Counted from the first letter of the stretch, positions 20,922 to 32,511 are shown. The stretch is DNA of 64,000 nt from Salpingoeca rosetta (GCA_033442325.1 JAWQFM010000005.1:1212329-1276328), one strand, 5' to 3'. Made by a program: numbers and translations. Notes: generated by a model not told the origin, from the letters alone.

Positions 20922-23900
20922 ATGAGAGGCTCAGGCACGCCTGGCCGGGCATGCGCGTGTCGCACTGCTGAGAGCCCAGGCAGCACCGCTTCTCACAACC
21001 GCAAACAACAACAAAGGCGGCCGGACAGGCCGAGAATACCACAACCACTGGCCTCACCGACCTCATGGCGCGTTGCTGTCGTGGTCATGACGCTGTGTGC
21101 TGCGGCGTGTGTGCCAAGAACCGCGGCACAAGCCCCATGCTCTTTTGCTTCCTCCAGCGAGACACCGCTCACCATCTTGCTGCGCCACAACAATGCACCC
21201 GTTGGTGCTTCCGGCCAGCTGTACCTGCCGGAGAGCCCCGTCACGTTCTCGTTCTCTGCTCCGACCTCAAACCCGGGCATCGCCATCTCCGCGGACGCAG
21301 TGGACACAGACGACTTCCTGATCCTCAACACAACCAACTTGAACGAACCTATTGACAACAATGCGTTTGAGCGGTGCGCGTTTAACTCCGTCACATACAT
21401 TGTCATCAATGGCACCACCGCCGCCCTGCGTACGCCGCCAGCAGCGGCTGCAAATGCCACCATCAAGTACCTGGCCTTTTCAGACGGCGCCGTCTCGCTT
21501 GAGCGCACTGTCACCTACAGCTGCGGGTGCCCCACTGCACAGTGTGCGCCGTGCACAGCGTGCACCATTTCGTGCCCCGTGGAGCATGTGCTGGTGAACC
21601 AGACCTGCCACAACGCCATCATTCCCGACAGCGCGTGTGAGCCGACGCCGGAGCGCGCGGCCATGCTTGATCTTCGGGCGCTCTCCCCTGTGCTCACAGC
21701 TGCATGGGATGACGTTGACCACCAGTGCAACTGGGACGGCATCACGTGCGATACAACGCAGTCTGTGACCGGCATCTCGCTGACGTCGTTTGCGGGCACC
21801 ATTTCTCTCAGCATGCTGCCCTCCTCGCTCGCCAACCTGCAGAACTTGGCGACGCTAGAGGCCCCGTCTGCAAACCTGACGGCTGTGTCGCCTGTGCTGG
21901 CGCAGCTGCCCGCGCTGCGGGTGCTCAACCTCGCCAGCAACCCGCTTGGCCCCGGCCCGCTGCCGGCCTTTGTGTGGTCACTGCCACTGCGGCAGCTGGG
22001 CGTCCCCTCCACGGGTCTGCGAGGCAACCTGTCTGCGACCGGCCAGCAGGTGCGCCTGCGCGCGACGCTGGACAAGATCGACGTGAGCGGCAACTTCCTC
22101 ACAGGCCCGCCACCGGTAGCAGCCAACGCCTCGCACACGGTGCAACTCACGCTGCAGCAGAGCGGGCCGTATCTGTTTGACTGTAACGGCGCCAACGCCA
22201 CGCTTGATGTGGGCGCATCCGCAGATCTCACGGACATCACCAGCACCACCTGCACGCTGTGCGGTGCACCCTATGCGCTGGCCAACCTCTCGCCCTCTGT
22301 GTTCCCTGCACCAGCAACTGCCGACAACGAAGGCGTGCTCTTCACTTGCGCACCGGGCTTTCTCACATCCACTACCGCAACCGCCTTCAACCTCACCTGC
22401 CAACTTGGTGCGCTGTCCACGCGGCATGTGTTTGCATGTGCATGTGCATGTGTGTATGCTTTATGGTTGTGTGAGTGACTATGTGTGTGAGAGAGTGACT
22501 ATGTGTGTGTGTGTGTGCATTGGTTGCGCGACGCACCACTCCTGTGTGTATCTTTGTCCTTGCTTCACCAATCCACACTGCCGCCATCCCTCATGTCTCC
22601 CTCCCTCTCCCATCACCACCATCCCACAAACAAATCCCAACAACAACATCATCATCATCATCATCAACAACAACACCATCATCACTTGAAGACGGGTCCG
22701 GTCTGCCCGGGTATTACGAGTGCAGCGCACCCACACCGGGCGAGTGCAGATGCATCGAGGTGGTGGATGTTGTGCTATTTCGCGACATCACTTTTACCTT
22801 TTCATCCTCGCACCCGCCCCTCTCCTCCTTCAACACCACCCTCTTTGTCACCACCCTCGCCGCTGCCATCGGTGCCTCCCCTGCCAGCATCGTGCTGCGC
22901 ATCCCACCAGCGAGCACATCCGACCAGACCATCGCCGCCCGCGTCGCAGTCACAACGCAGACGGTGTCGGGCTTCACCACTGACCCGCTTGCCGCTGTCG
23001 ACGCTGCATTGCAGGACGCAACTGCTCTCCAAACCGCCTTCAGTGCACACGCCTACTTCTCCGCCCTCTCTGGCGTGACTGTGGAGGTCGTGGTGACGAC
23101 GAGCACCACCACGCTTGCGCCCGCCTCAACCACAACAGCACCAACGACTGCGGCACCAAACTCCGACTCGTCCTCCCTGCCCATCCCCATCATTGCCGGT
23201 GTCGCCGGCGGTGTTGCCTTCCTTGCGCTGCTCTTCCTCGTCATCTGCCTCATTTCCCGCCGCCGCCGCGCCAAGACCAACCCCGACATTGTGACGATGG
23301 TCGACACGGGCGTGCTCCCGGGCGGCAGCAGCACAGGCAGCTCCACGCCGATTCAGGGCCGTGGCGACAGGCAGGTCATGAATCCGCTCTTTGACGACAG
23401 CACGGCTGCAGAGGGGATTGACGGCTCGTCGACAGATGGCGGCGGCGGAGGGGTTGCGCTCAACCAGAAGCGCCGCATGGTGCTGGGCAACACGATGGGC
23501 GCCTCATCCGATACGGGCGCGCAGGTGCTGCAGTTTGACGACCTCGGCGACGCGGACGTGGCGACGGAGACGGATGACGCAGCAGCAAAGAACGCGCAGC
23601 AGCGGGCGAGCCTGGTGATGGAGAAGGTGGCTGGGTTTGGGTTTGACATGGGGGAGACGTCAGACGGAGAGACATTTAACCTTGATGATGGCGGGTTTGG
23701 TGACGATGAGGACGTGGATGTGGACGCTTTTGACCTGGACGCAATTGCCGACGCAGAGACGCAGGCAGCAGCATCGGCAACCAAGACGCCCCCGCGAAAG
23801 AGGAGGAGCAGTGTTGGCCGTGGTGGTGGTGGTGCCAGCGGCGACGAGGACATGGAGGACCTCACTGGGTTTGGTGACAAGAGCCTGGTGCACAGCAACC

Positions 23901-24878
23901 CGTTTATCACGGGCCTGTTCCCGCAGCAGCCGACCGATGTCGACGATGACGATGAACGGCTGGGCGCGGGCGAGAACGAAGCGACCCACGGCTTTGCAGA
24001 CCAAAGTGGTGCGGAGGTGCCGCCACTGCCGGCGAAGCACGAGCCGCACTCCGCTGCGTCTGTGGAGACCACATCGACCGTCGCCACGACAGCTACGACA
24101 GCCACGCCACTCCAGCCACCGCCACAGCTGCCAAAGGAGGAGGAGGAGGAGGAGGAAGCCGGACCACCGCCTCCGCCCCCCGCCAAATCACACACGCCGC
24201 AAGACACGGTTGCGCCGCAGCCCGCCGCGACAACAACAACAGCAGCAGCACCGCCACCTGCACTGCCTGCCAAGTCCACCCCTGCACCTGCTGCCAAGGC
24301 GAAGGACTCGCCATACTCGAGCCTGCCGCCACGCAGCAAGACGGCGTCAACAAGCGCCATGGACGGGCGGGCCAGCGCCGCGAGTGTGAGCTCCGTTGGC
24401 TCGCCAAAGCCAGGCCTCTCACGCAACACGTCCGCATCAAGTCAGTGTTGTTGGTTGCGCGCGTTTGATTCCCTGGAATTGCGTTGTTGAGTGTTGTGTA
24501 ATTGAGTGTGCAGCTGTGCAGTTGTGCTAGGTGTGGGGCTATGGCATGTGCCCTGTTGTGCGGCGGTGTTGCACACAACCATAGCTACACCACGTGAATG
24601 CACATCCAACTTGCACTACCTGCCTTTTGTTCTTACCCTGCATTCCTCACCTTCTGACACACACACACACGCACGCACGCACGCACGCACCATGACCCCC
24701 GCTCGTCCTTCCCTGGGTGTCAGGTCGGCTGTCGATCAAGCGCAGCGAGGAGGACCGTCGCGCCGCCCGCGAGGCGCGCATCAACGCCCTCAAGGCCGCA
24801 AAGGAGGAGGTGCGCTGCTGACTGCGGATGATTCGTGTGCTGGTGTTGTTGTTGTTGTTGTTTGAGTTGTTGTTTGAG

Positions 24879-24915
<37 letters not shown>

Positions 24916-24956
24916 AGTTGTTGTTGTTGTTGTTTAAGTTGTTGTTGTTGTTTGAG

Positions 24957-25013
<57 letters not shown>

Positions 25014-26701
25014 GAGTTGTTGTTGTTGTTTAAGTTGTTGTTGTTTAAGTTGTTGTTGTTGTAGTGCTGGTGCTGGTGCTGGTGCTGGTGCTGGGACGAT
25101 GAACCAATCGGTGCTGGTTCGGTAGCATGTTGTGCGACTTGAGCCATGGTTGTGGTGATGCCGCGATCTGGTATACCATCTTGTTCCATCCTGTACACGA
25201 TTCATACATCCCCTTTCCTCACCCCACTTTCCCTCCCTTTGCCTCTCTCTCTCTCTCTCACACACTCACACCCCCCCCCCCACACACACACACACTCACA
25301 CACACACACTCTCTCTCGCGCATCCATACCACCGTATTTTGATGGCTCTGGTGTGCAGGCAAAGCGCTCGCAGATGCGGCACCCGTCGCAGTGGTCGTTC
25401 AACGAGTGCGTGGCCTGGCTCCGACACCACGATTTCAAGGAGTTTGTGGACGTGTTTTACAACAACGGGTTTGAGGGCAAACACCTAGTGGCGCTGCAGG
25501 CGCGATCGTTTACGGGCGTGCGCTCTGTGTCGCAGGACCGCGTGCTTGCTCTCATTGACGCCATTGCCCGACTCAAGGAGGTGCGTACTTTGTACATGGC
25601 CCCAGCCGTGGTGGCGGTTGGTTGTGAAACGAACGTGCACTGATGCTGGCATGGACCGTGCACTGAAGCTGGTGTAACTGTGCTGATTGGTTGTTTGCCC
25701 CCCCCCCACCACACACACACACACATACAAAAAAAACACAAACACAAACACACACGCACACACATGCACATACTCACACACACACACACACGCACACACA
25801 CACACATGCTCACACACACACACACACATGCTCACACACATACACACACACAACACAACACAACGCACCCCCTCCCCCTAGGTTGGGTACTGGGTGCCGC
25901 CGGACATTGATGACGACGATGTGGACACATTGGCGCCGCTCGAGGAAGAAGAAGCGCCGAGCGGCCCGCCGCTGCCCACAACACCTGCACCGCCATCCAC
26001 CTTGCCCCCATCGCTTGCGACACCGGCAGCACCATCCTCATCGACAGCAGCACCGCCGCCGCCATCAAGCCTGCCACCCTCACTGGCACAGATGACGCCA
26101 CCAGCACCGCCCCCCACCACCACGCTGCCACCACGCTCGGGCCCCTTGCCACCGGTGCCTGCACCAGGTCCGTCAGCACCAGACAACGGTGTCGTCGGCA
26201 GCAGCGGCAGTGCTATTGGTGGTGGTGGTGTCGTGGGCGGCGCAGTTGACACCTCAGATGCAATGGAGACGGCACGAATTGACTACATTCTCTCGCAACA
26301 CCTGACGCGCGATGATGCGAAGGCGCTGCTCAAGTTTGGACACGGTGACGAGGGCGAGTACCTGTTCCGTGCGAGCCAGTCGTCTCCCGGCGCCGTCGTG
26401 CTGTCCATGTGTCATGCAAACACGCTACACAACTTTCAGATCAAGCGGCAAGGCCCGCTCTATGTCACACCGAACGGCCTCACCTTCAGCAGCCTTCCCG
26501 TACGCCACTCGAATTGGGGGGGGGGGGAGACGTACGGGAGATGGAGAGGGGTTGGACGAGAGATAAGGGGGGGGGGGAGTTCCGGAAGGGGAAGAGAGGC
26601 TAAGTCAAGAGGTGAGTGAGGGGTTGTACGCAGGCATTTGTACACATCCACAACAAGCTGTCACTCCCACTCACCACTCCATTGTCGTTTGCGTTTGCAT
26701 G

Positions 26702-26787
<86 letters not shown>

Positions 26788-26923
26788 ACAGGAGCTCGTT
26801 GGCCACTTTAAGCAGCACGACAACGCAGGCTTGCCCTGCCGCCTGTCGCACGCGTGTACACACTACGACCACCTCATCCCCAAGCCAGCCAACGACTCGT
26901 TTGGCTTTGGAGGTATGTGAATG

Positions 26924-26958
<35 letters not shown>

Positions 26959-27168
26959 GTGTTCGTCATCGTTTGCACCAATACCGCTGTCGTCACTTCT
27001 TACCTCCAAGCACCACATTTACACACATGCACGCACGCAGACGACGTCACGTATGACGATCTGGACAGCGTACAGAAGCAAGTGCCCGCTGAGGATGAGT
27101 ATGAGGTGTTGGAAGCGACACAGACGCAGAGGGCGCAGTTTGCCGCCATGCGCGCCTCCGTGCAGGTT

Positions 27169-27240
<72 letters not shown>

Positions 27241-27424
27241 TGTGCGTGTGTGTCTATGTGTCGATGTGTCTGCGTGTGTATACATGTGTTTTTGTGTGTG
27301 TACATGTGTGCGTGTGTTTCACAACCCATCTCTTATTTCCTTGTGCACCTCTCATATTTCACTGTCGCCCAACACCCCCCACACTCCGCCGCTTCAACTC
27401 TCCTGCGTACTGTTGCAGCCGTGA
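20922..27424 (+). CDS. Single-pass receptor: signal peptide, possible Reeler-like domain, plant-type LRRNT+LRR, sushi-like region, TM, acidic/Pro-rich tail, SAM, SH2 and pTyr motifs
   Basis: Signal [21 protein letters not shown]; [13 protein letters not shown]; LRRs such as [11 protein letters not shown] and [16 protein letters not shown]; [24 protein letters not shown] followed by RRRR; [25 protein letters not shown] (25359-25580); SH2 [27 protein letters not shown] (~26280-26860); final exon CCG TGA at 27419-27424. Confidence 0.88.
24845..25094. repeat. Interrupted (TTG)n tract followed by (GCTGGT)n
   Basis: Intronic; periodic TTTGAG/TTTAAG interruptions. Confidence 0.9.
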
Positions 27425-27760
27425 TGTGGTTGATGAGTGCTCTCAGTTGTTAGTAGGTTGCTTTTTGTTTCCCTTGCGTGCAGGGGCACGAGCACAAGCA
27501 TCTATATGCGTGAACGTGTCTTCCCCATGCACTCTCTTTGCTTCGCTTCTTTGTTTGCTTCCCCGTCGTTTATACTTTGCTTCTGCAATTGTCGTCCTTG
27601 TCGTTAACTTTGCCTCTGTATGTGTGTGAGTGTGTGTATGTGTGAGTGTGTGTGTGTGTATCGACCAAATCGAACCTGTGTGAACATGAATGGCGGCACG
27701 AAGGACATGTGTGCATGACGTGAGTGTGTGCGCGTGAGTGTGTGCATGACGTGAGTGTGT

Positions 27761-32511
<4,751 letters not shown>

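What the first reader, a model, noticed from the sequence alone, without database searches (positions are those of the whole stretch)
20922..27424. Kinase-less LRR receptor fused to an SLP-76-like SAM/acidic/Pro-rich/SH2 signalling module
Seen: one phase-consistent gene encodes a signal peptide, an LRR ectodomain, one TM helix, then SAM, an acidic stretch ([16 protein letters not shown]), a long PxxP region and a C-terminal SH2 retaining the FLVR arginine (YLFRASQS). No catalytic domain is present. Known: SAM-acidic-Pro-SH2 is the domain order of the cytosolic immune adaptors SLP-76/LCP2 and CLNK, and choanoflagellates have unusual TM-SH2 proteins. Inference: this may be a receptor-adaptor fusion that senses an external, possibly bacterial, ligand, clusters through SAM and signals through cytoplasmic tyrosine kinases.
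Basis: partly seen in the sequence, partly recalled or inferred. Interest (0 to 1): 0.9.

Follow-up and report, generated by a model that had tools for sequence, protein, structure and literature searches.

The report
Kinase-less choanoflagellate receptor with SAM and SH2
This is one real, expressed Salpingoeca rosetta gene for a membrane-spanning receptor-like protein that has no enzyme domain but carries a SAM and a phosphotyrosine-binding SH2 domain inside the cell. It belongs to an undescribed choanoflagellate family, and it resembles the immune adaptor SLP-76 only in the order of its domains.

Summary
RNA reads and a 5,077-nt transcript contig join eight GT-AG exons (20922-27424, + strand) into one mRNA. 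Its translation equals the annotated 1,470-aa protein PTSG_01845 of Salpingoeca rosetta, named only "hypothetical / SH2 domain-containing protein". The protein has:
- a signal-peptide-like segment;
- a short plant-type LRR solenoid;
- one transmembrane helix;
- about 420 aa of acidic, disordered sequence;
- a SAM domain;
- a tyrosine-free acidic and proline-rich linker;
- an SH2 domain with its phosphotyrosine-binding residues intact;
- a tail with two YxxL motifs.

No catalytic domain is found.

It is not a one-off fusion. Codosiga hollandica, Salpingoeca kvevrii, Monosiga brevicollis and environmental relatives keep the same TM-SAM-SH2 core. Their ectodomains vary, with or without LRR. Their cytoplasmic tyrosine motifs also vary (YxN, YxxM, YEDV), and some carry a B-box between SAM and SH2.

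The SLP-76 reading is only partly supported. The SH2 is closest to Syk/ZAP-70/Shark, Grb7/10/14 and SHP SH2 domains. The SAM is closest to the polymer-forming TEL and DGK-delta type. The acidic stretch has no tyrosine and there is no RxxK motif. Only a language-model feature search on the whole module points to BLNK-like proteins, and that signal disappears with the SH2 alone.

Most likely function (inferred): a kinase-less transmembrane docking receptor. Sensing of bacteria is untested.

The parts
20922..22407 (+). Exon 1 (aa 1-495 plus 1 nt). It holds the start ATG; a long basic N-region followed by a hydrophobic signal-like segment (aa 48-63, then AQA before the conserved Cys); an N-terminal domain of unassigned fold (aa ~70-200); a Cys-rich stretch; the LRRNT_2 cap (aa 244-277); and an LRR solenoid (aa ~240-432).
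   Evidence: RNA contigs X4 and X6 cover 21500-22406 and join to 22691. Pfam LRRNT_2 scores 21.9 bits. LRR fold: VIA Z 13.6. The translation matches P0001.
22692..24440 (+). Exon 2 (aa 496-1078). It holds a Cys-rich sushi-like segment; a juxtamembrane beta-alpha-beta-beta-alpha-beta module (aa ~517-634, nt 22754-23107); the transmembrane helix (aa 657-686, nt ~23174-23263); and a long acidic, Ser/Thr/Pro-rich disordered cytoplasmic region with a single tyrosine (Y1037).
   Evidence: Hydropathy scan finds one TM segment. TM_ErbB1-like match of 24 bits, below the cut-off. AF2 pLDDT 70-82 for the juxtamembrane module. Composition: D+E 16%, one Tyr. RNA depth 10-39.
24724..24809 (+). Exon 3, an 86-nt mini-exon. 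It encodes a charged helix ([28 protein letters not shown]) just before the SAM domain. It links the receptor part to the SAM/SH2 part in frame.
   Evidence: Raw RNA junction reads: 24440>24724 (13 reads) and 24809>25359 (10 reads), both GT..AG. Helix in the AF2 model. A similar segment is present in the M. brevicollis orthologue.
25359..25580 (+). Exon 4 (aa 1108-1181): the SAM domain. Its core is highly conserved across the family (W..EC..WL...GF..F.D.FY.NGFEG..LV).
   Evidence: Pfam SAM_2 scores 21.9-22.1 bits against a cut-off of 20.5 and matches in 6 of 10 relatives. Five-helix bundle at pLDDT 80-93. The alignment has 15 invariant columns.
25882..26499 (+). Exon 5 (aa 1182-1387). It holds the conserved GYW motif; an acidic stretch without tyrosine; a Pro-rich disordered linker (aa 1187-1304; 11 PxxP and one class I RSGPLPP); an N-terminal helix; and most of the SH2 domain (from nt ~26251).
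   Evidence: Pfam SH2. Linker statistics. AF2: linker pLDDT below 50, SH2 above 90.
26792..26912 (+). Exon 6 (aa 1388-1427 plus 1 nt): the C-terminal part of the SH2 domain with the family motif GLPCRL..AC..YDH, and the start of the tail.
   Evidence: RNA contigs and the loose ends at 26500 agree. Pfam SH2 runs to aa 1393. The motif is conserved in orthologues. The intron position after F.SL(P/E) is shared by environmental relatives.
27041..27165 (+). Exon 7 (aa 1428-1469): an acidic tail with two YxxL motifs, Y1432 (YDDL, nt 27052) and Y1448 (YEVL, nt 27100), 12 residues apart. A predicted helix follows.
   Evidence: Sequence and motif scan. The YE(V/A)(L/I) motif is conserved in 4 of 5 full-length relatives. 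Tail helix at pLDDT ~77-80.
27419..27424 (+). Exon 8: the last codon (Pro) and the TGA stop. The 3' UTR continues beyond 27499.
   Evidence: The X6 contig joins 27160>27414 and runs on to 27499, with about 490 nt more. The CDS closes in frame.

Best explanation
Window 20922-27424 (+) is Salpingoeca rosetta gene PTSG_01845. It is a single eight-exon gene for a 1,470-aa type I membrane protein.

Shown:
- It is transcribed and spliced as one mRNA.
- It has a short LRR-containing ectodomain, one transmembrane helix and no catalytic domain.
- Its cytoplasmic side holds a SAM domain, a disordered acidic and Pro-rich linker, and an SH2 domain.
- The SH2 keeps the alpha-A2 Arg, beta-B5 Arg and beta-D4 His, which in canonical SH2 domains bind phosphotyrosine.
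- It is the S. rosetta member of a family found so far only in choanoflagellates. The conserved core is a juxtamembrane module, a TM helix, SAM, SH2 and a YE(V/A)(L/I) tail. The ectodomains and the cytoplasmic tyrosine motifs vary between species.
- The SH2 is of the Syk/ZAP-70/Shark, Grb7/10/14 and SHP kind. It is not of the SLP-76/BLNK kind.

Inferred mechanism: it acts as a kinase-less receptor and transmembrane docking protein.
1. The ectodomain binds an unknown ligand or a neighbouring surface and brings molecules together. The SAM domain, whose closest solved relatives form polymers, may add self-association.
2. Separate cytoplasmic or receptor tyrosine kinases phosphorylate the acidic YxxL tail. 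In orthologues the extra YxN, YxxM and YEDV repeats would be phosphorylated too.
3. The SH2 then either holds the protein on a phosphorylated partner, or binds the phosphorylated tail of a neighbouring copy (or its own tail, as an off-switch). The phosphorylated motifs recruit other SH2 proteins.

Functionally this combines what vertebrates split between a receptor, a LAT-type transmembrane adaptor and a SAM-SH2 adaptor. That is an analogy, not shown ancestry.
For: - One mRNA: junction reads and a single contig across all exons, with zero depth in the flanking intron bins. The CDS equals P0001 exactly. The protein is annotated as PTSG_01845 / XP_004997824.1 / F2TZ44.
- Domains.
- Family: P0006 (C. 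hollandica: TNFR_c6 + LRR + TM + SAM + B-box + SH2), P0009 (S. kvevrii), P0017 (M. brevicollis) and P0018, plus environmental fragments. Identity over the SAM-SH2 module is 31-49%, with 44 invariant columns including the SH2 arginines and histidine.
- Single copy in its own genome.
- SH2 affinity.
- SAM affinity to polymerising SAM domains.
- Tyrosine motifs: the two tail YxxL motifs here, and 3x EEEYVTM, 4x YED(V/I) and many YxN in relatives.
- No catalytic domain.
Against: - Nothing here shows ligand binding, phosphorylation of the tail, SH2 specificity or SAM self-association. The SAM-SAM complex prediction gave no verdict.
- Outside its domains the S. rosetta protein has only three tyrosines. 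That is far fewer than its relatives, so a docking role is weaker for this member than for the family.
- LRR HMM scores are marginal, and the ectodomain model is poor overall (mean pLDDT 47).
- The signal peptide is atypical: a 47-aa basic region precedes it.
- The first YxxL (Y1432) is not conserved.
Confidence: 0.6

Rival explanations
1. One reading: the cytoplasmic SAM-acidic-Pro-SH2 module is a true homologue of the metazoan SLP-76/BLNK/CLNK adaptor family, here fused to a receptor. Both lineages would then descend from one ancestral SAM-SH2 adaptor.
For: The domain order is the same. A language-model feature search with residues 1100-1470 ranked SAM+SH2 'B-cell linker protein-like' clusters of arthropods, molluscs and chordates first, at 0.83, 0.83, 0.77 and 0.77.
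Against: - Those scores lie below the tool's 0.9 line, and the signal is lost with the SH2 alone.
- The nearest SH2 domains by exhaustive phmmer are Shark, Syk-type and SHP. The only SAM+SH2 protein among the 30 of 36 hits checked for domains is a family member.
- PDB sequence, profile and fold rankings show ZAP-70/SYK, GRB7/10/14, SHP-2 and PLC-gamma, with no LCP2 or BLNK in the top 50-60.
- The SAM is nearest to TEL and DGK-delta.
- The acidic region has no tyrosine and there is no RxxK motif.
- The linker is not conserved and is replaced by a B-box in several relatives.
- No formal tree including SLP-76 could be built here.
Confidence: 0.12
2. It is not a primary sensor. It is an accessory subunit or regulator of receptor tyrosine kinases. 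The SH2 docks on an autophosphorylated RTK, and the LRR ectodomain modulates that receptor, in the manner of LRR transmembrane regulators such as LRIG or Kekkon (comparison from general knowledge).
For: - It has no kinase of its own but an intact phosphotyrosine pocket.
- The M. brevicollis phosphotyrosine toolkit is very large, with 123 SH2 proteins (PMC4342544). This genome has 92 SH2 matches.
- The ectodomain varies between species while the SH2 stays conserved.
Against: No partner has been identified. The conserved tail tyrosine and the SAM domain are not explained by a pure accessory role. Nothing here distinguishes this view from the main explanation, and the two overlap.
Confidence: 0.2
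3. Two neighbouring genes, an LRR-TM protein and a cytosolic SAM-SH2 adaptor, are joined only by read-through or by an assembly artefact.
For: After exon 2 the open frame would reach a stop at 24490. Exon 4 contains an in-frame ATG (the Met in ..RSQMRHP..). RNA depth is somewhat higher over the 3' exons.
Against: - Spliced raw reads leave exon 2 at 24440 and enter the mini-exon and then exon 4, in frame.
- Depth is zero in the intron bins upstream of exon 4.
- The same TM+SAM+SH2 single ORF appears in transcriptomes and genomes of at least three other species.
Confidence: 0.02

Closest known systems
SLP-76 (LCP2) / BLNK / CLNK cytosolic adaptors
   Same: SAM, then an acidic and Pro-rich disordered region, then a C-terminal SH2. 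No catalytic domain. The module-level language-model features are nearest to BLNK-like SAM+SH2 clusters (below the tool's confidence line).
   Different: This protein spans the membrane and has an ectodomain. Its SAM lies about 420 aa after the TM helix rather than at the N-terminus. The acidic stretch has no tyrosine (SLP-76's YxxP sites are a feature I recall from general knowledge). There is no RxxK motif. The SH2 and SAM sequence affinities lie with other families.
Syk / ZAP-70 / Shark tandem-SH2 kinases and SHP phosphatases (SH2 domains only)
   Same: These are the closest SH2 sequences. ZAP-70/SYK score E ~1e-7 with the single sequence and ~1e-27 with the family profile (two domains summed). 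Shark, Syk-type and SHP proteins are the nearest hits outside the family in 1.84 billion representatives. The family consensus VHHFQIE resembles ZAP-70's FHHFPIE.
   Different: There is one SH2, not a tandem pair. There is no kinase or phosphatase domain, and the protein is membrane-anchored. GRB10/14 give the best single-domain profile score (70 bits), so the affinity is to a broad SH2 group rather than to one family.
Transmembrane adaptor proteins and (hem)ITAM receptors (LAT, PAG, Draper, CLEC-2; from general knowledge)
   Same: Kinase-less membrane proteins whose cytoplasmic tyrosine motifs are phosphorylated by separate kinases and then recruit SH2 proteins. This protein has an acidic ..EDEYEVL tail motif and a second YxxL 12 residues upstream. 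Relatives carry repeated YxN, YxxM and YEDV motifs.
   Different: Those proteins have no SH2 or SAM of their own. There is no sequence homology, and motif function is untested here. Only the second YxxL is conserved.
Plant-type LRR receptor ectodomains (LRR-RK/RLP: SOBIR1, BIR2, ERL1)
   Same: An LRRNT_2 cap followed by a short LRR solenoid. Structural matches at Z ~12.
   Different: Only about 6-7 degenerate repeats. The intracellular part is unrelated. Bacterial and animal LRR proteins match equally well, so the fold says nothing about the ligand.

Membership tests
SLP-76/BLNK/CLNK adaptor family | SH2 domain that groups with SLP-76/BLNK SH2 domains | tested here: not met
   Similarity rankings only, not a tree. 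The nearest SH2 domains outside the family are Shark, Syk-type and SHP. PDB sequence, profile and fold searches list ZAP-70/SYK, GRB7/10/14, SHP-2 and PLC-gamma, with no LCP2/BLNK in the top 50-60.
SLP-76/BLNK/CLNK adaptor family | Acidic region carrying the phosphorylated tyrosines (YxxP type) that recruit Vav, Nck and Itk (feature from general knowledge) | tested here: not met
   Residues 1187-1304 contain no tyrosine.
SLP-76/BLNK/CLNK adaptor family | Pro-rich region with an RxxK motif that binds the Gads SH3 domain (feature from general knowledge) | tested here: not met
   No RxxK. The linker has one Arg and no Lys. It has 11 PxxP and one class I RSGPLPP. The linker is not conserved and is replaced by a B-box in relatives.
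SLP-76/BLNK/CLNK adaptor family | Soluble cytosolic protein with an N-terminal SAM and a C-terminal SH2 | tested here: not met
   The SAM-before-SH2 order is kept, but the protein has a signal-like segment, an ectodomain and a TM helix at aa 657-686. The SAM starts at aa ~1113.
SH2 domain (Pfam PF00017), phosphotyrosine-binding competent | HMM above the gathering score, the SH2 fold, and conserved alpha-A2 Arg, beta-B5 Arg and beta-D4 His | tested here: met
   44.1 bits against 21. pLDDT above 90, and Foldseek probability 1.00 to many SH2 structures. R1324, R1344 and H1364 are invariant in the six-species alignment. Their role in phosphotyrosine binding is general SH2 knowledge, not tested here.
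SAM domain (PF07647/PF00536) | HMM above the gathering score and a five-helix bundle | tested here: met
   SAM_2 scores 21.9-22.1 bits against 20.5 when the domain is scanned alone, and 16.3 inside the full-length protein. It matches 6 of 10 relatives, best E 1.3e-5. The AF2 model has five helices at pLDDT 80-93. The family profile hits TEL, Sfmbt and DGK-delta SAM domains.
SAM polymer formers (TEL, DGK-delta, Shank type) | Head-to-tail self-association | tested here: inconclusive
   These are the nearest solved SAM domains, but the two-copy complex prediction gave no verdict.
LRR receptor ectodomain | LRR HMMs above their cut-offs and a solenoid fold | tested here: met
   Only LRRNT_2 passes its cut-off (21.9 against 20.7); LRR_4/8/1 fall below theirs. 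The fold is met: Z 13.6, 166 residues aligned, rmsd 2.9, from a model with pLDDT 72-82 in that region. The C. hollandica relative has LRR_1 at 50 bits and LRR_4 at 41 bits.
ITAM / hemITAM | YxxL/I-x(6-12)-YxxL/I, or a single acidic-preceded YxxL, that is phosphorylated and read by tandem-SH2 kinases | tested here: inconclusive
   The pattern is present: YDDL-x12-YEVL, with EDE before the second Tyr. Only the second motif is conserved. Phosphorylation and binding cannot be tested with these tools. A search of this genome with a Shark-type kinase returned only kinase-domain matches at E<=1e-10.
Receptor tyrosine kinase / receptor PTP | Cytoplasmic catalytic domain | tested here: not met
   No kinase or phosphatase family at E<=0.1 in P0001 or in the five longest relatives.

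The most novel reading that the evidence does not exclude
The family is a pre-animal 'immunoreceptor in one chain'. An LRR or otherwise variable ectodomain senses bacterial or prey-derived cues. SAM-driven clustering then allows phosphorylation of a hemITAM-like acidic YxxL tail. The protein's own Syk-type SH2 reads neighbouring tails to build a signalling lattice. On this reading, the receptor/adaptor/ITAM logic of animal immune signalling already existed, in fused form, in the unicellular relatives of animals.
Probability: 0.1. Interest if true: 0.85.

Novelty: new variant of a known kind. Interest (0 to 1): 0.5.

Why it matters
Choanoflagellates are already known to have very large and unusual phosphotyrosine toolkits. 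M. brevicollis has 123 SH2 proteins combined with 53 other domain types (PMC4342544). Almost none of the lineage-specific architectures has a proposed role. This work turns one "hypothetical protein" into a defined family, so far found only in choanoflagellates. It is a family of kinase-less membrane receptors with a strongly conserved SAM-SH2 core and fast-changing ectodomains and tyrosine motifs.

That gives a concrete, genetically tractable candidate in S. rosetta for asking how tyrosine-kinase signals were coupled to the cell surface before animals. It also shows that the receptor-plus-adaptor logic of animal immune and growth-factor signalling can arise by a different assembly of the same parts.

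For a specialist this is interesting but not startling. No function has been shown, and the attractive SLP-76 link does not survive sequence tests.

Tried and rejected
- Two-gene or read-through model: rejected by junction reads and by orthologues.
- SLP-76 kinship by sequence: not found.
- SAM-SAM complex prediction (two copies of aa 1108-1186): no verdict, so it counts neither for nor against.
- The search for homologous proteins with the module alignment found only seven environmental or choanoflagellate relatives. With the S. kvevrii SH2 region it found only the query itself. The word index did not reach other SH2 families, so these searches say nothing about SLP-76.
- Ectodomain AF2 model from a five-sequence alignment: mean pLDDT 47. 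The N-terminal domain (aa ~70-240) and the sushi-like segment stay unassigned. An Atlas feature search on aa 70-250 gave no usable hit.
- Atlas shape search with the cytoplasmic model returned only generic SH2 proteins.
- Literature:
  - No paper in the held library names PTSG_01845, F2TZ44, A9V1L3 or MONBRDRAFT_37412.
  - No paper combined S. rosetta, SH2, transmembrane and SAM.
  - The Manning 2008 and Liu 2011 surveys were not held.
  - The supplements of a recent S. rosetta kinase and phosphoproteome paper do not mention the gene.
- The Shark-type kinase search in this genome gave only kinase-domain hits. The best tandem-SH2 locus I inspected looks like PLC-gamma from reading its ORFs. No reader for the YxxL tail was identified.
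- I could not obtain an SLP-76/BLNK sequence by reference, and I did not type one from memory. No tree including that family was built.

Full report
**1. What is in the sequence**

The region is eukaryotic, with CA/TG-rich introns. Working from open frames and splice signals, I found that the exon ending at 24440 (phase 1) cannot join the SAM exon at 25359 (phase 0) directly. An 86-nt mini-exon at 24724-24809 restores the frame.

RNA evidence settles the model.
- In two stranded raw-read RNA runs, spliced reads cross 24440>24724 (9 and 4 reads) and 24809>25359 (8 and 2 reads), both GT..AG.
- One 5,077-nt assembled contig (run X6) carries, in order, 21500-22406, 22691-24440, 24724-24807, 25357-25578, 25880-26500, 26796-26909, 27039-27160 and 27414-27499.
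- Depth is zero in 24500-24699 and 24900-25099. The raw RNA runs are also zero in 25100-25299, where only contig pieces lie.

The exons are 20922-22407, 22692-24440, 24724-24809, 25359-25580, 25882-26499, 26792-26912, 27041-27165 and 27419-27424. Together they give a 4,413-nt CDS with GT-AG at every intron. Its translation is letter-for-letter the database protein P0001. P0001 is Salpingoeca rosetta PTSG_01845 (XP_004997824.1, UniProt F2TZ44), named only "hypothetical protein / SH2 domain-containing protein". So the gene model was already annotated. Its make-up and its family were not described in any paper I could search.

**2. Domains**

*Ectodomain.*
- A hydrophobic segment at aa 48-63 followed by AQA sits behind a 47-aa basic stretch. 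The M. brevicollis and S. kvevrii relatives have ordinary N-terminal signal peptides, and the C. hollandica relative shows the same delayed pattern.
- Pfam gives LRRNT_2 at aa 244-277 (21.9 bits, cut-off 20.7). The LRR_4/8/1 models fall below their cut-offs.
- The AF2 model of aa 64-662 is poor overall (mean pLDDT 47). It reaches pLDDT 72-82 over an alternating strand/helix solenoid.
- That solenoid aligns to LRR proteins at Z up to 13.6 (166 residues, rmsd 2.9). The matches include plant LRR receptor ectodomains, but bacterial and animal LRR proteins match equally well.
- A juxtamembrane beta-alpha-beta-beta-alpha-beta module (aa ~517-634, pLDDT 70-82) and a Cys-rich sushi-like segment are shared with relatives. 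Their folds were not tested.

*Membrane and cytoplasmic region.*
- There is one TM helix, aa 657-686.
- About 420 aa follow that are acidic (16% D+E), rich in Ser, Thr and Pro, and contain a single tyrosine.

*SAM.*
- Pfam SAM_2 scores 21.9-22.1 bits (cut-off 20.5) on the isolated domain and matches in 6 of 10 relatives.
- AF2 gives a five-helix bundle at pLDDT 80-93.
- Fifteen columns are invariant across ten sequences.

*Linker.* Residues 1187-1304 are modelled as disordered. They contain no Tyr and no Lys, one Arg, 29% Pro, 11 PxxP and one class I motif, RSGPLPP.

*SH2.*
- Pfam scores 44.1 bits (cut-off 21), and AF2 pLDDT is above 90.
- Foldseek gives probability 1.00 to many SH2 structures.
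- The alpha-A2 Arg, beta-B5 Arg and beta-D4 His are invariant in the family. In canonical SH2 domains these bind phosphotyrosine.

*Tail.* It carries YDDL (Y1432) and, 12 residues later, EDEYEVL (Y1448), followed by a predicted helix.

*No catalytic domain.* No Pfam catalytic family appears at E<=0.1.

**3. It is a family, not a one-off fusion**

I ran an exhaustive phmmer search of 1.84 billion cluster representatives with the SH2 N-terminal part. It found the protein itself and a graded series of relatives.
- A 78%-identical fragment, and fragments at 45-55% identity.
- Full-length proteins: P0006 (Codosiga hollandica, 1,514 aa), P0009 (Salpingoeca kvevrii, 802 aa), P0017 (Monosiga brevicollis MONBRDRAFT_37412, 970 aa) and P0018 (unnamed, 1,179 aa).
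- A profile search added five more environmental members.

All share the same SAM core, a G(Y/G/A/S)W motif after it, the SH2 with DGEY(L/I)xR, and a GLPCRL..AC..YDH ending. Identity to the S. rosetta module is 31-49%.

What varies:
- *Ectodomain.* C. hollandica has TNFR_c6 plus strong LRR. P0018 has LRR. M. brevicollis and S. kvevrii have no LRR.
- *SAM-SH2 linker.* It is Pro-rich in some members and a B-box zinc finger in others.
- *Tyrosine motifs between TM and SAM and in the tail.* M. brevicollis has three (E/D)EYVTM repeats. S. kvevrii has four YED(V/I). C. hollandica, P0018 and the environmental members have many YxN.

A YE(V/A)(L/I) tail motif is kept in four of five full-length proteins. 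Environmental gene fragments all run into an intron at the same point of the SH2 as S. rosetta exon 5/6.

In its own 55.4-Mb genome the gene is single-copy. That genome has 92 SH2 matches.

All named members are choanoflagellates. None of the hits I checked outside the family has this architecture.

**4. Is it SLP-76-like?**

In domain order, yes. In ancestry, the tests say no.

*Sequence and fold evidence against kinship.*
- The nearest SH2 domains outside the family in the exhaustive search are in Shark-type kinases (SH2-Ank-SH2-kinase), Syk-type kinases, SHP-type phosphatases and multi-SH2 proteins. The only SAM+SH2 protein among the 30 of the 36 hits whose domains I checked is a family member, P0017.
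- Against the PDB, the single sequence hits ZAP-70 and SYK first (E ~1e-7), then SHP-2 and GRB10/14.
- The family profile hits SYK/ZAP-70 at E ~1e-27 (two domains summed), GRB10/14 at 70 bits, then SHP-2, GRB7 and PLC-gamma.
- Foldseek ranks Grb10/7, ZAP-70, Syk, SH2D1B and RasGAP highest.
- No LCP2 or BLNK entry appears in any top list. I could not confirm which of their domains are in the PDB, so the exhaustive search is the stronger argument.
- The SAM profile is nearest to TEL/ETV6, Sfmbt, DGK-delta and Shank.
- The functional hallmarks of SLP-76 that I know from the literature are tyrosines in the acidic region and an RxxK Gads site. Both are absent.

*One lead the other way.* The language-model feature search with the whole module (aa 1100-1470) listed SAM+SH2 "B-cell linker protein-like" clusters first, at 0.83 and 0.77. 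These scores are under the tool's 0.9 line. With the SH2 alone only generic SH2 clusters appear. The shape search is equally generic. I read the result as recognition of the shared architecture.

*Limit.* I could not build a tree that includes SLP-76/BLNK, because no sequence of theirs was available by reference. That is the decisive missing computation.

**5. How it most likely works**

Shown: a membrane protein with an extracellular binding-type domain, no enzyme, an SH2 that keeps the canonical phosphotyrosine-binding residues, a SAM, and acidic tyrosine motifs. The intracellular core is under strong conservation while the outside changes.

Inferred:
- It is a kinase-less receptor and transmembrane docking protein that depends on separate tyrosine kinases.
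- Its SH2 either parks it on phosphorylated partners such as RTKs, or binds the phosphorylated YE(V/A)(L/I) tail of a neighbour or of itself. The Syk/SHP-like SH2 type fits a pYxxL/I ligand, which is a statement from general knowledge.
- The SAM may add self-association. Its nearest solved relatives form polymers, but the two-copy complex prediction gave no verdict.
- The relatives' YxN, YxxM and YEDV repeats look like docking sites for other SH2 proteins.
- The S. rosetta member has few such sites, so the docking role is weaker for it than for the family.
- A role in sensing bacteria is pure conjecture. The LRR fold does not indicate a ligand, and two orthologues lack LRR.

**6. Verdict**

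- Novelty: a new variant of a known kind (kinase-less receptors and transmembrane adaptors). It is a family found so far only in choanoflagellates, and the literature I could search does not describe it.
- It sits against a known background of exotic choanoflagellate SH2 architectures (PMC4342544).
- Interest is moderate.

Two other first-stage notes of this scan cover the same gene: tail tyrosine motifs (s1-440485) and mosaic ectodomain (s1-440682). My results agree with the parts I tested.

Noticed in passing
window 24230-24258: RNA reads, mostly from run X22 (9 reads; 1 in X21), show a 29-nt step back with 16 extra letters. This amounts to a 45-nt in-frame expansion of the Thr/Ala-rich repeat of exon 2 relative to the reference. 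It is probably a strain or allele length polymorphism in a low-complexity coding tract.
   Followed up: no
window 24830-25060 (intron 3) and introns generally: Intron 3 holds a ~230-nt (TTG)n tract interrupted by TTTGAG/TTTAAG units. The other introns are dominated by (CA)n/(TG)n microsatellites. These repeats made the read tool skip parts of introns 1 and 3.
   Followed up: no
P0006, P0007, P0038, P0040, P0042 (relatives, between SAM and SH2): Several family members carry a B-box/ZZ-like zinc finger (C..C...C..C...C..C..H pattern) in place of the Pro-rich linker. Pfam ANCHR-like_BBOX and CEBP_ZZ match below their cut-offs.
   Followed up: partly
P0002-P0005, P0010 (environmental fragments): All these predicted ORFs read out of the SH2 into non-coding sequence just after the F.SL(P/E) motif. 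That is the position of the S. rosetta exon 5/6 boundary (26499/26792), so the intron position seems conserved across the family.
   Followed up: partly
window 27724-28839 (+): The next open frame downstream has a very long poly-Thr run, a basic Ser/Thr/Ala-rich region and, after a CA-repeat intron, an IQ-like motif (..[16 protein letters not shown]..). It is probably a separate gene.
   Followed up: no
L001 (G000:C1:977000-984000) and L002 (G000:C7:1972000-1981000): The closest SH2 paralogue in this genome is 46% identical over 51 aa. It lies in an unrelated gene on contig 1. The best-scoring tandem-SH2 locus on contig 7 looks like PLC-gamma (PLC-X-like, SH2-SH2 and SH3-like stretches in the ORFs), but no domain scan was run on it.
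   Followed up: partly
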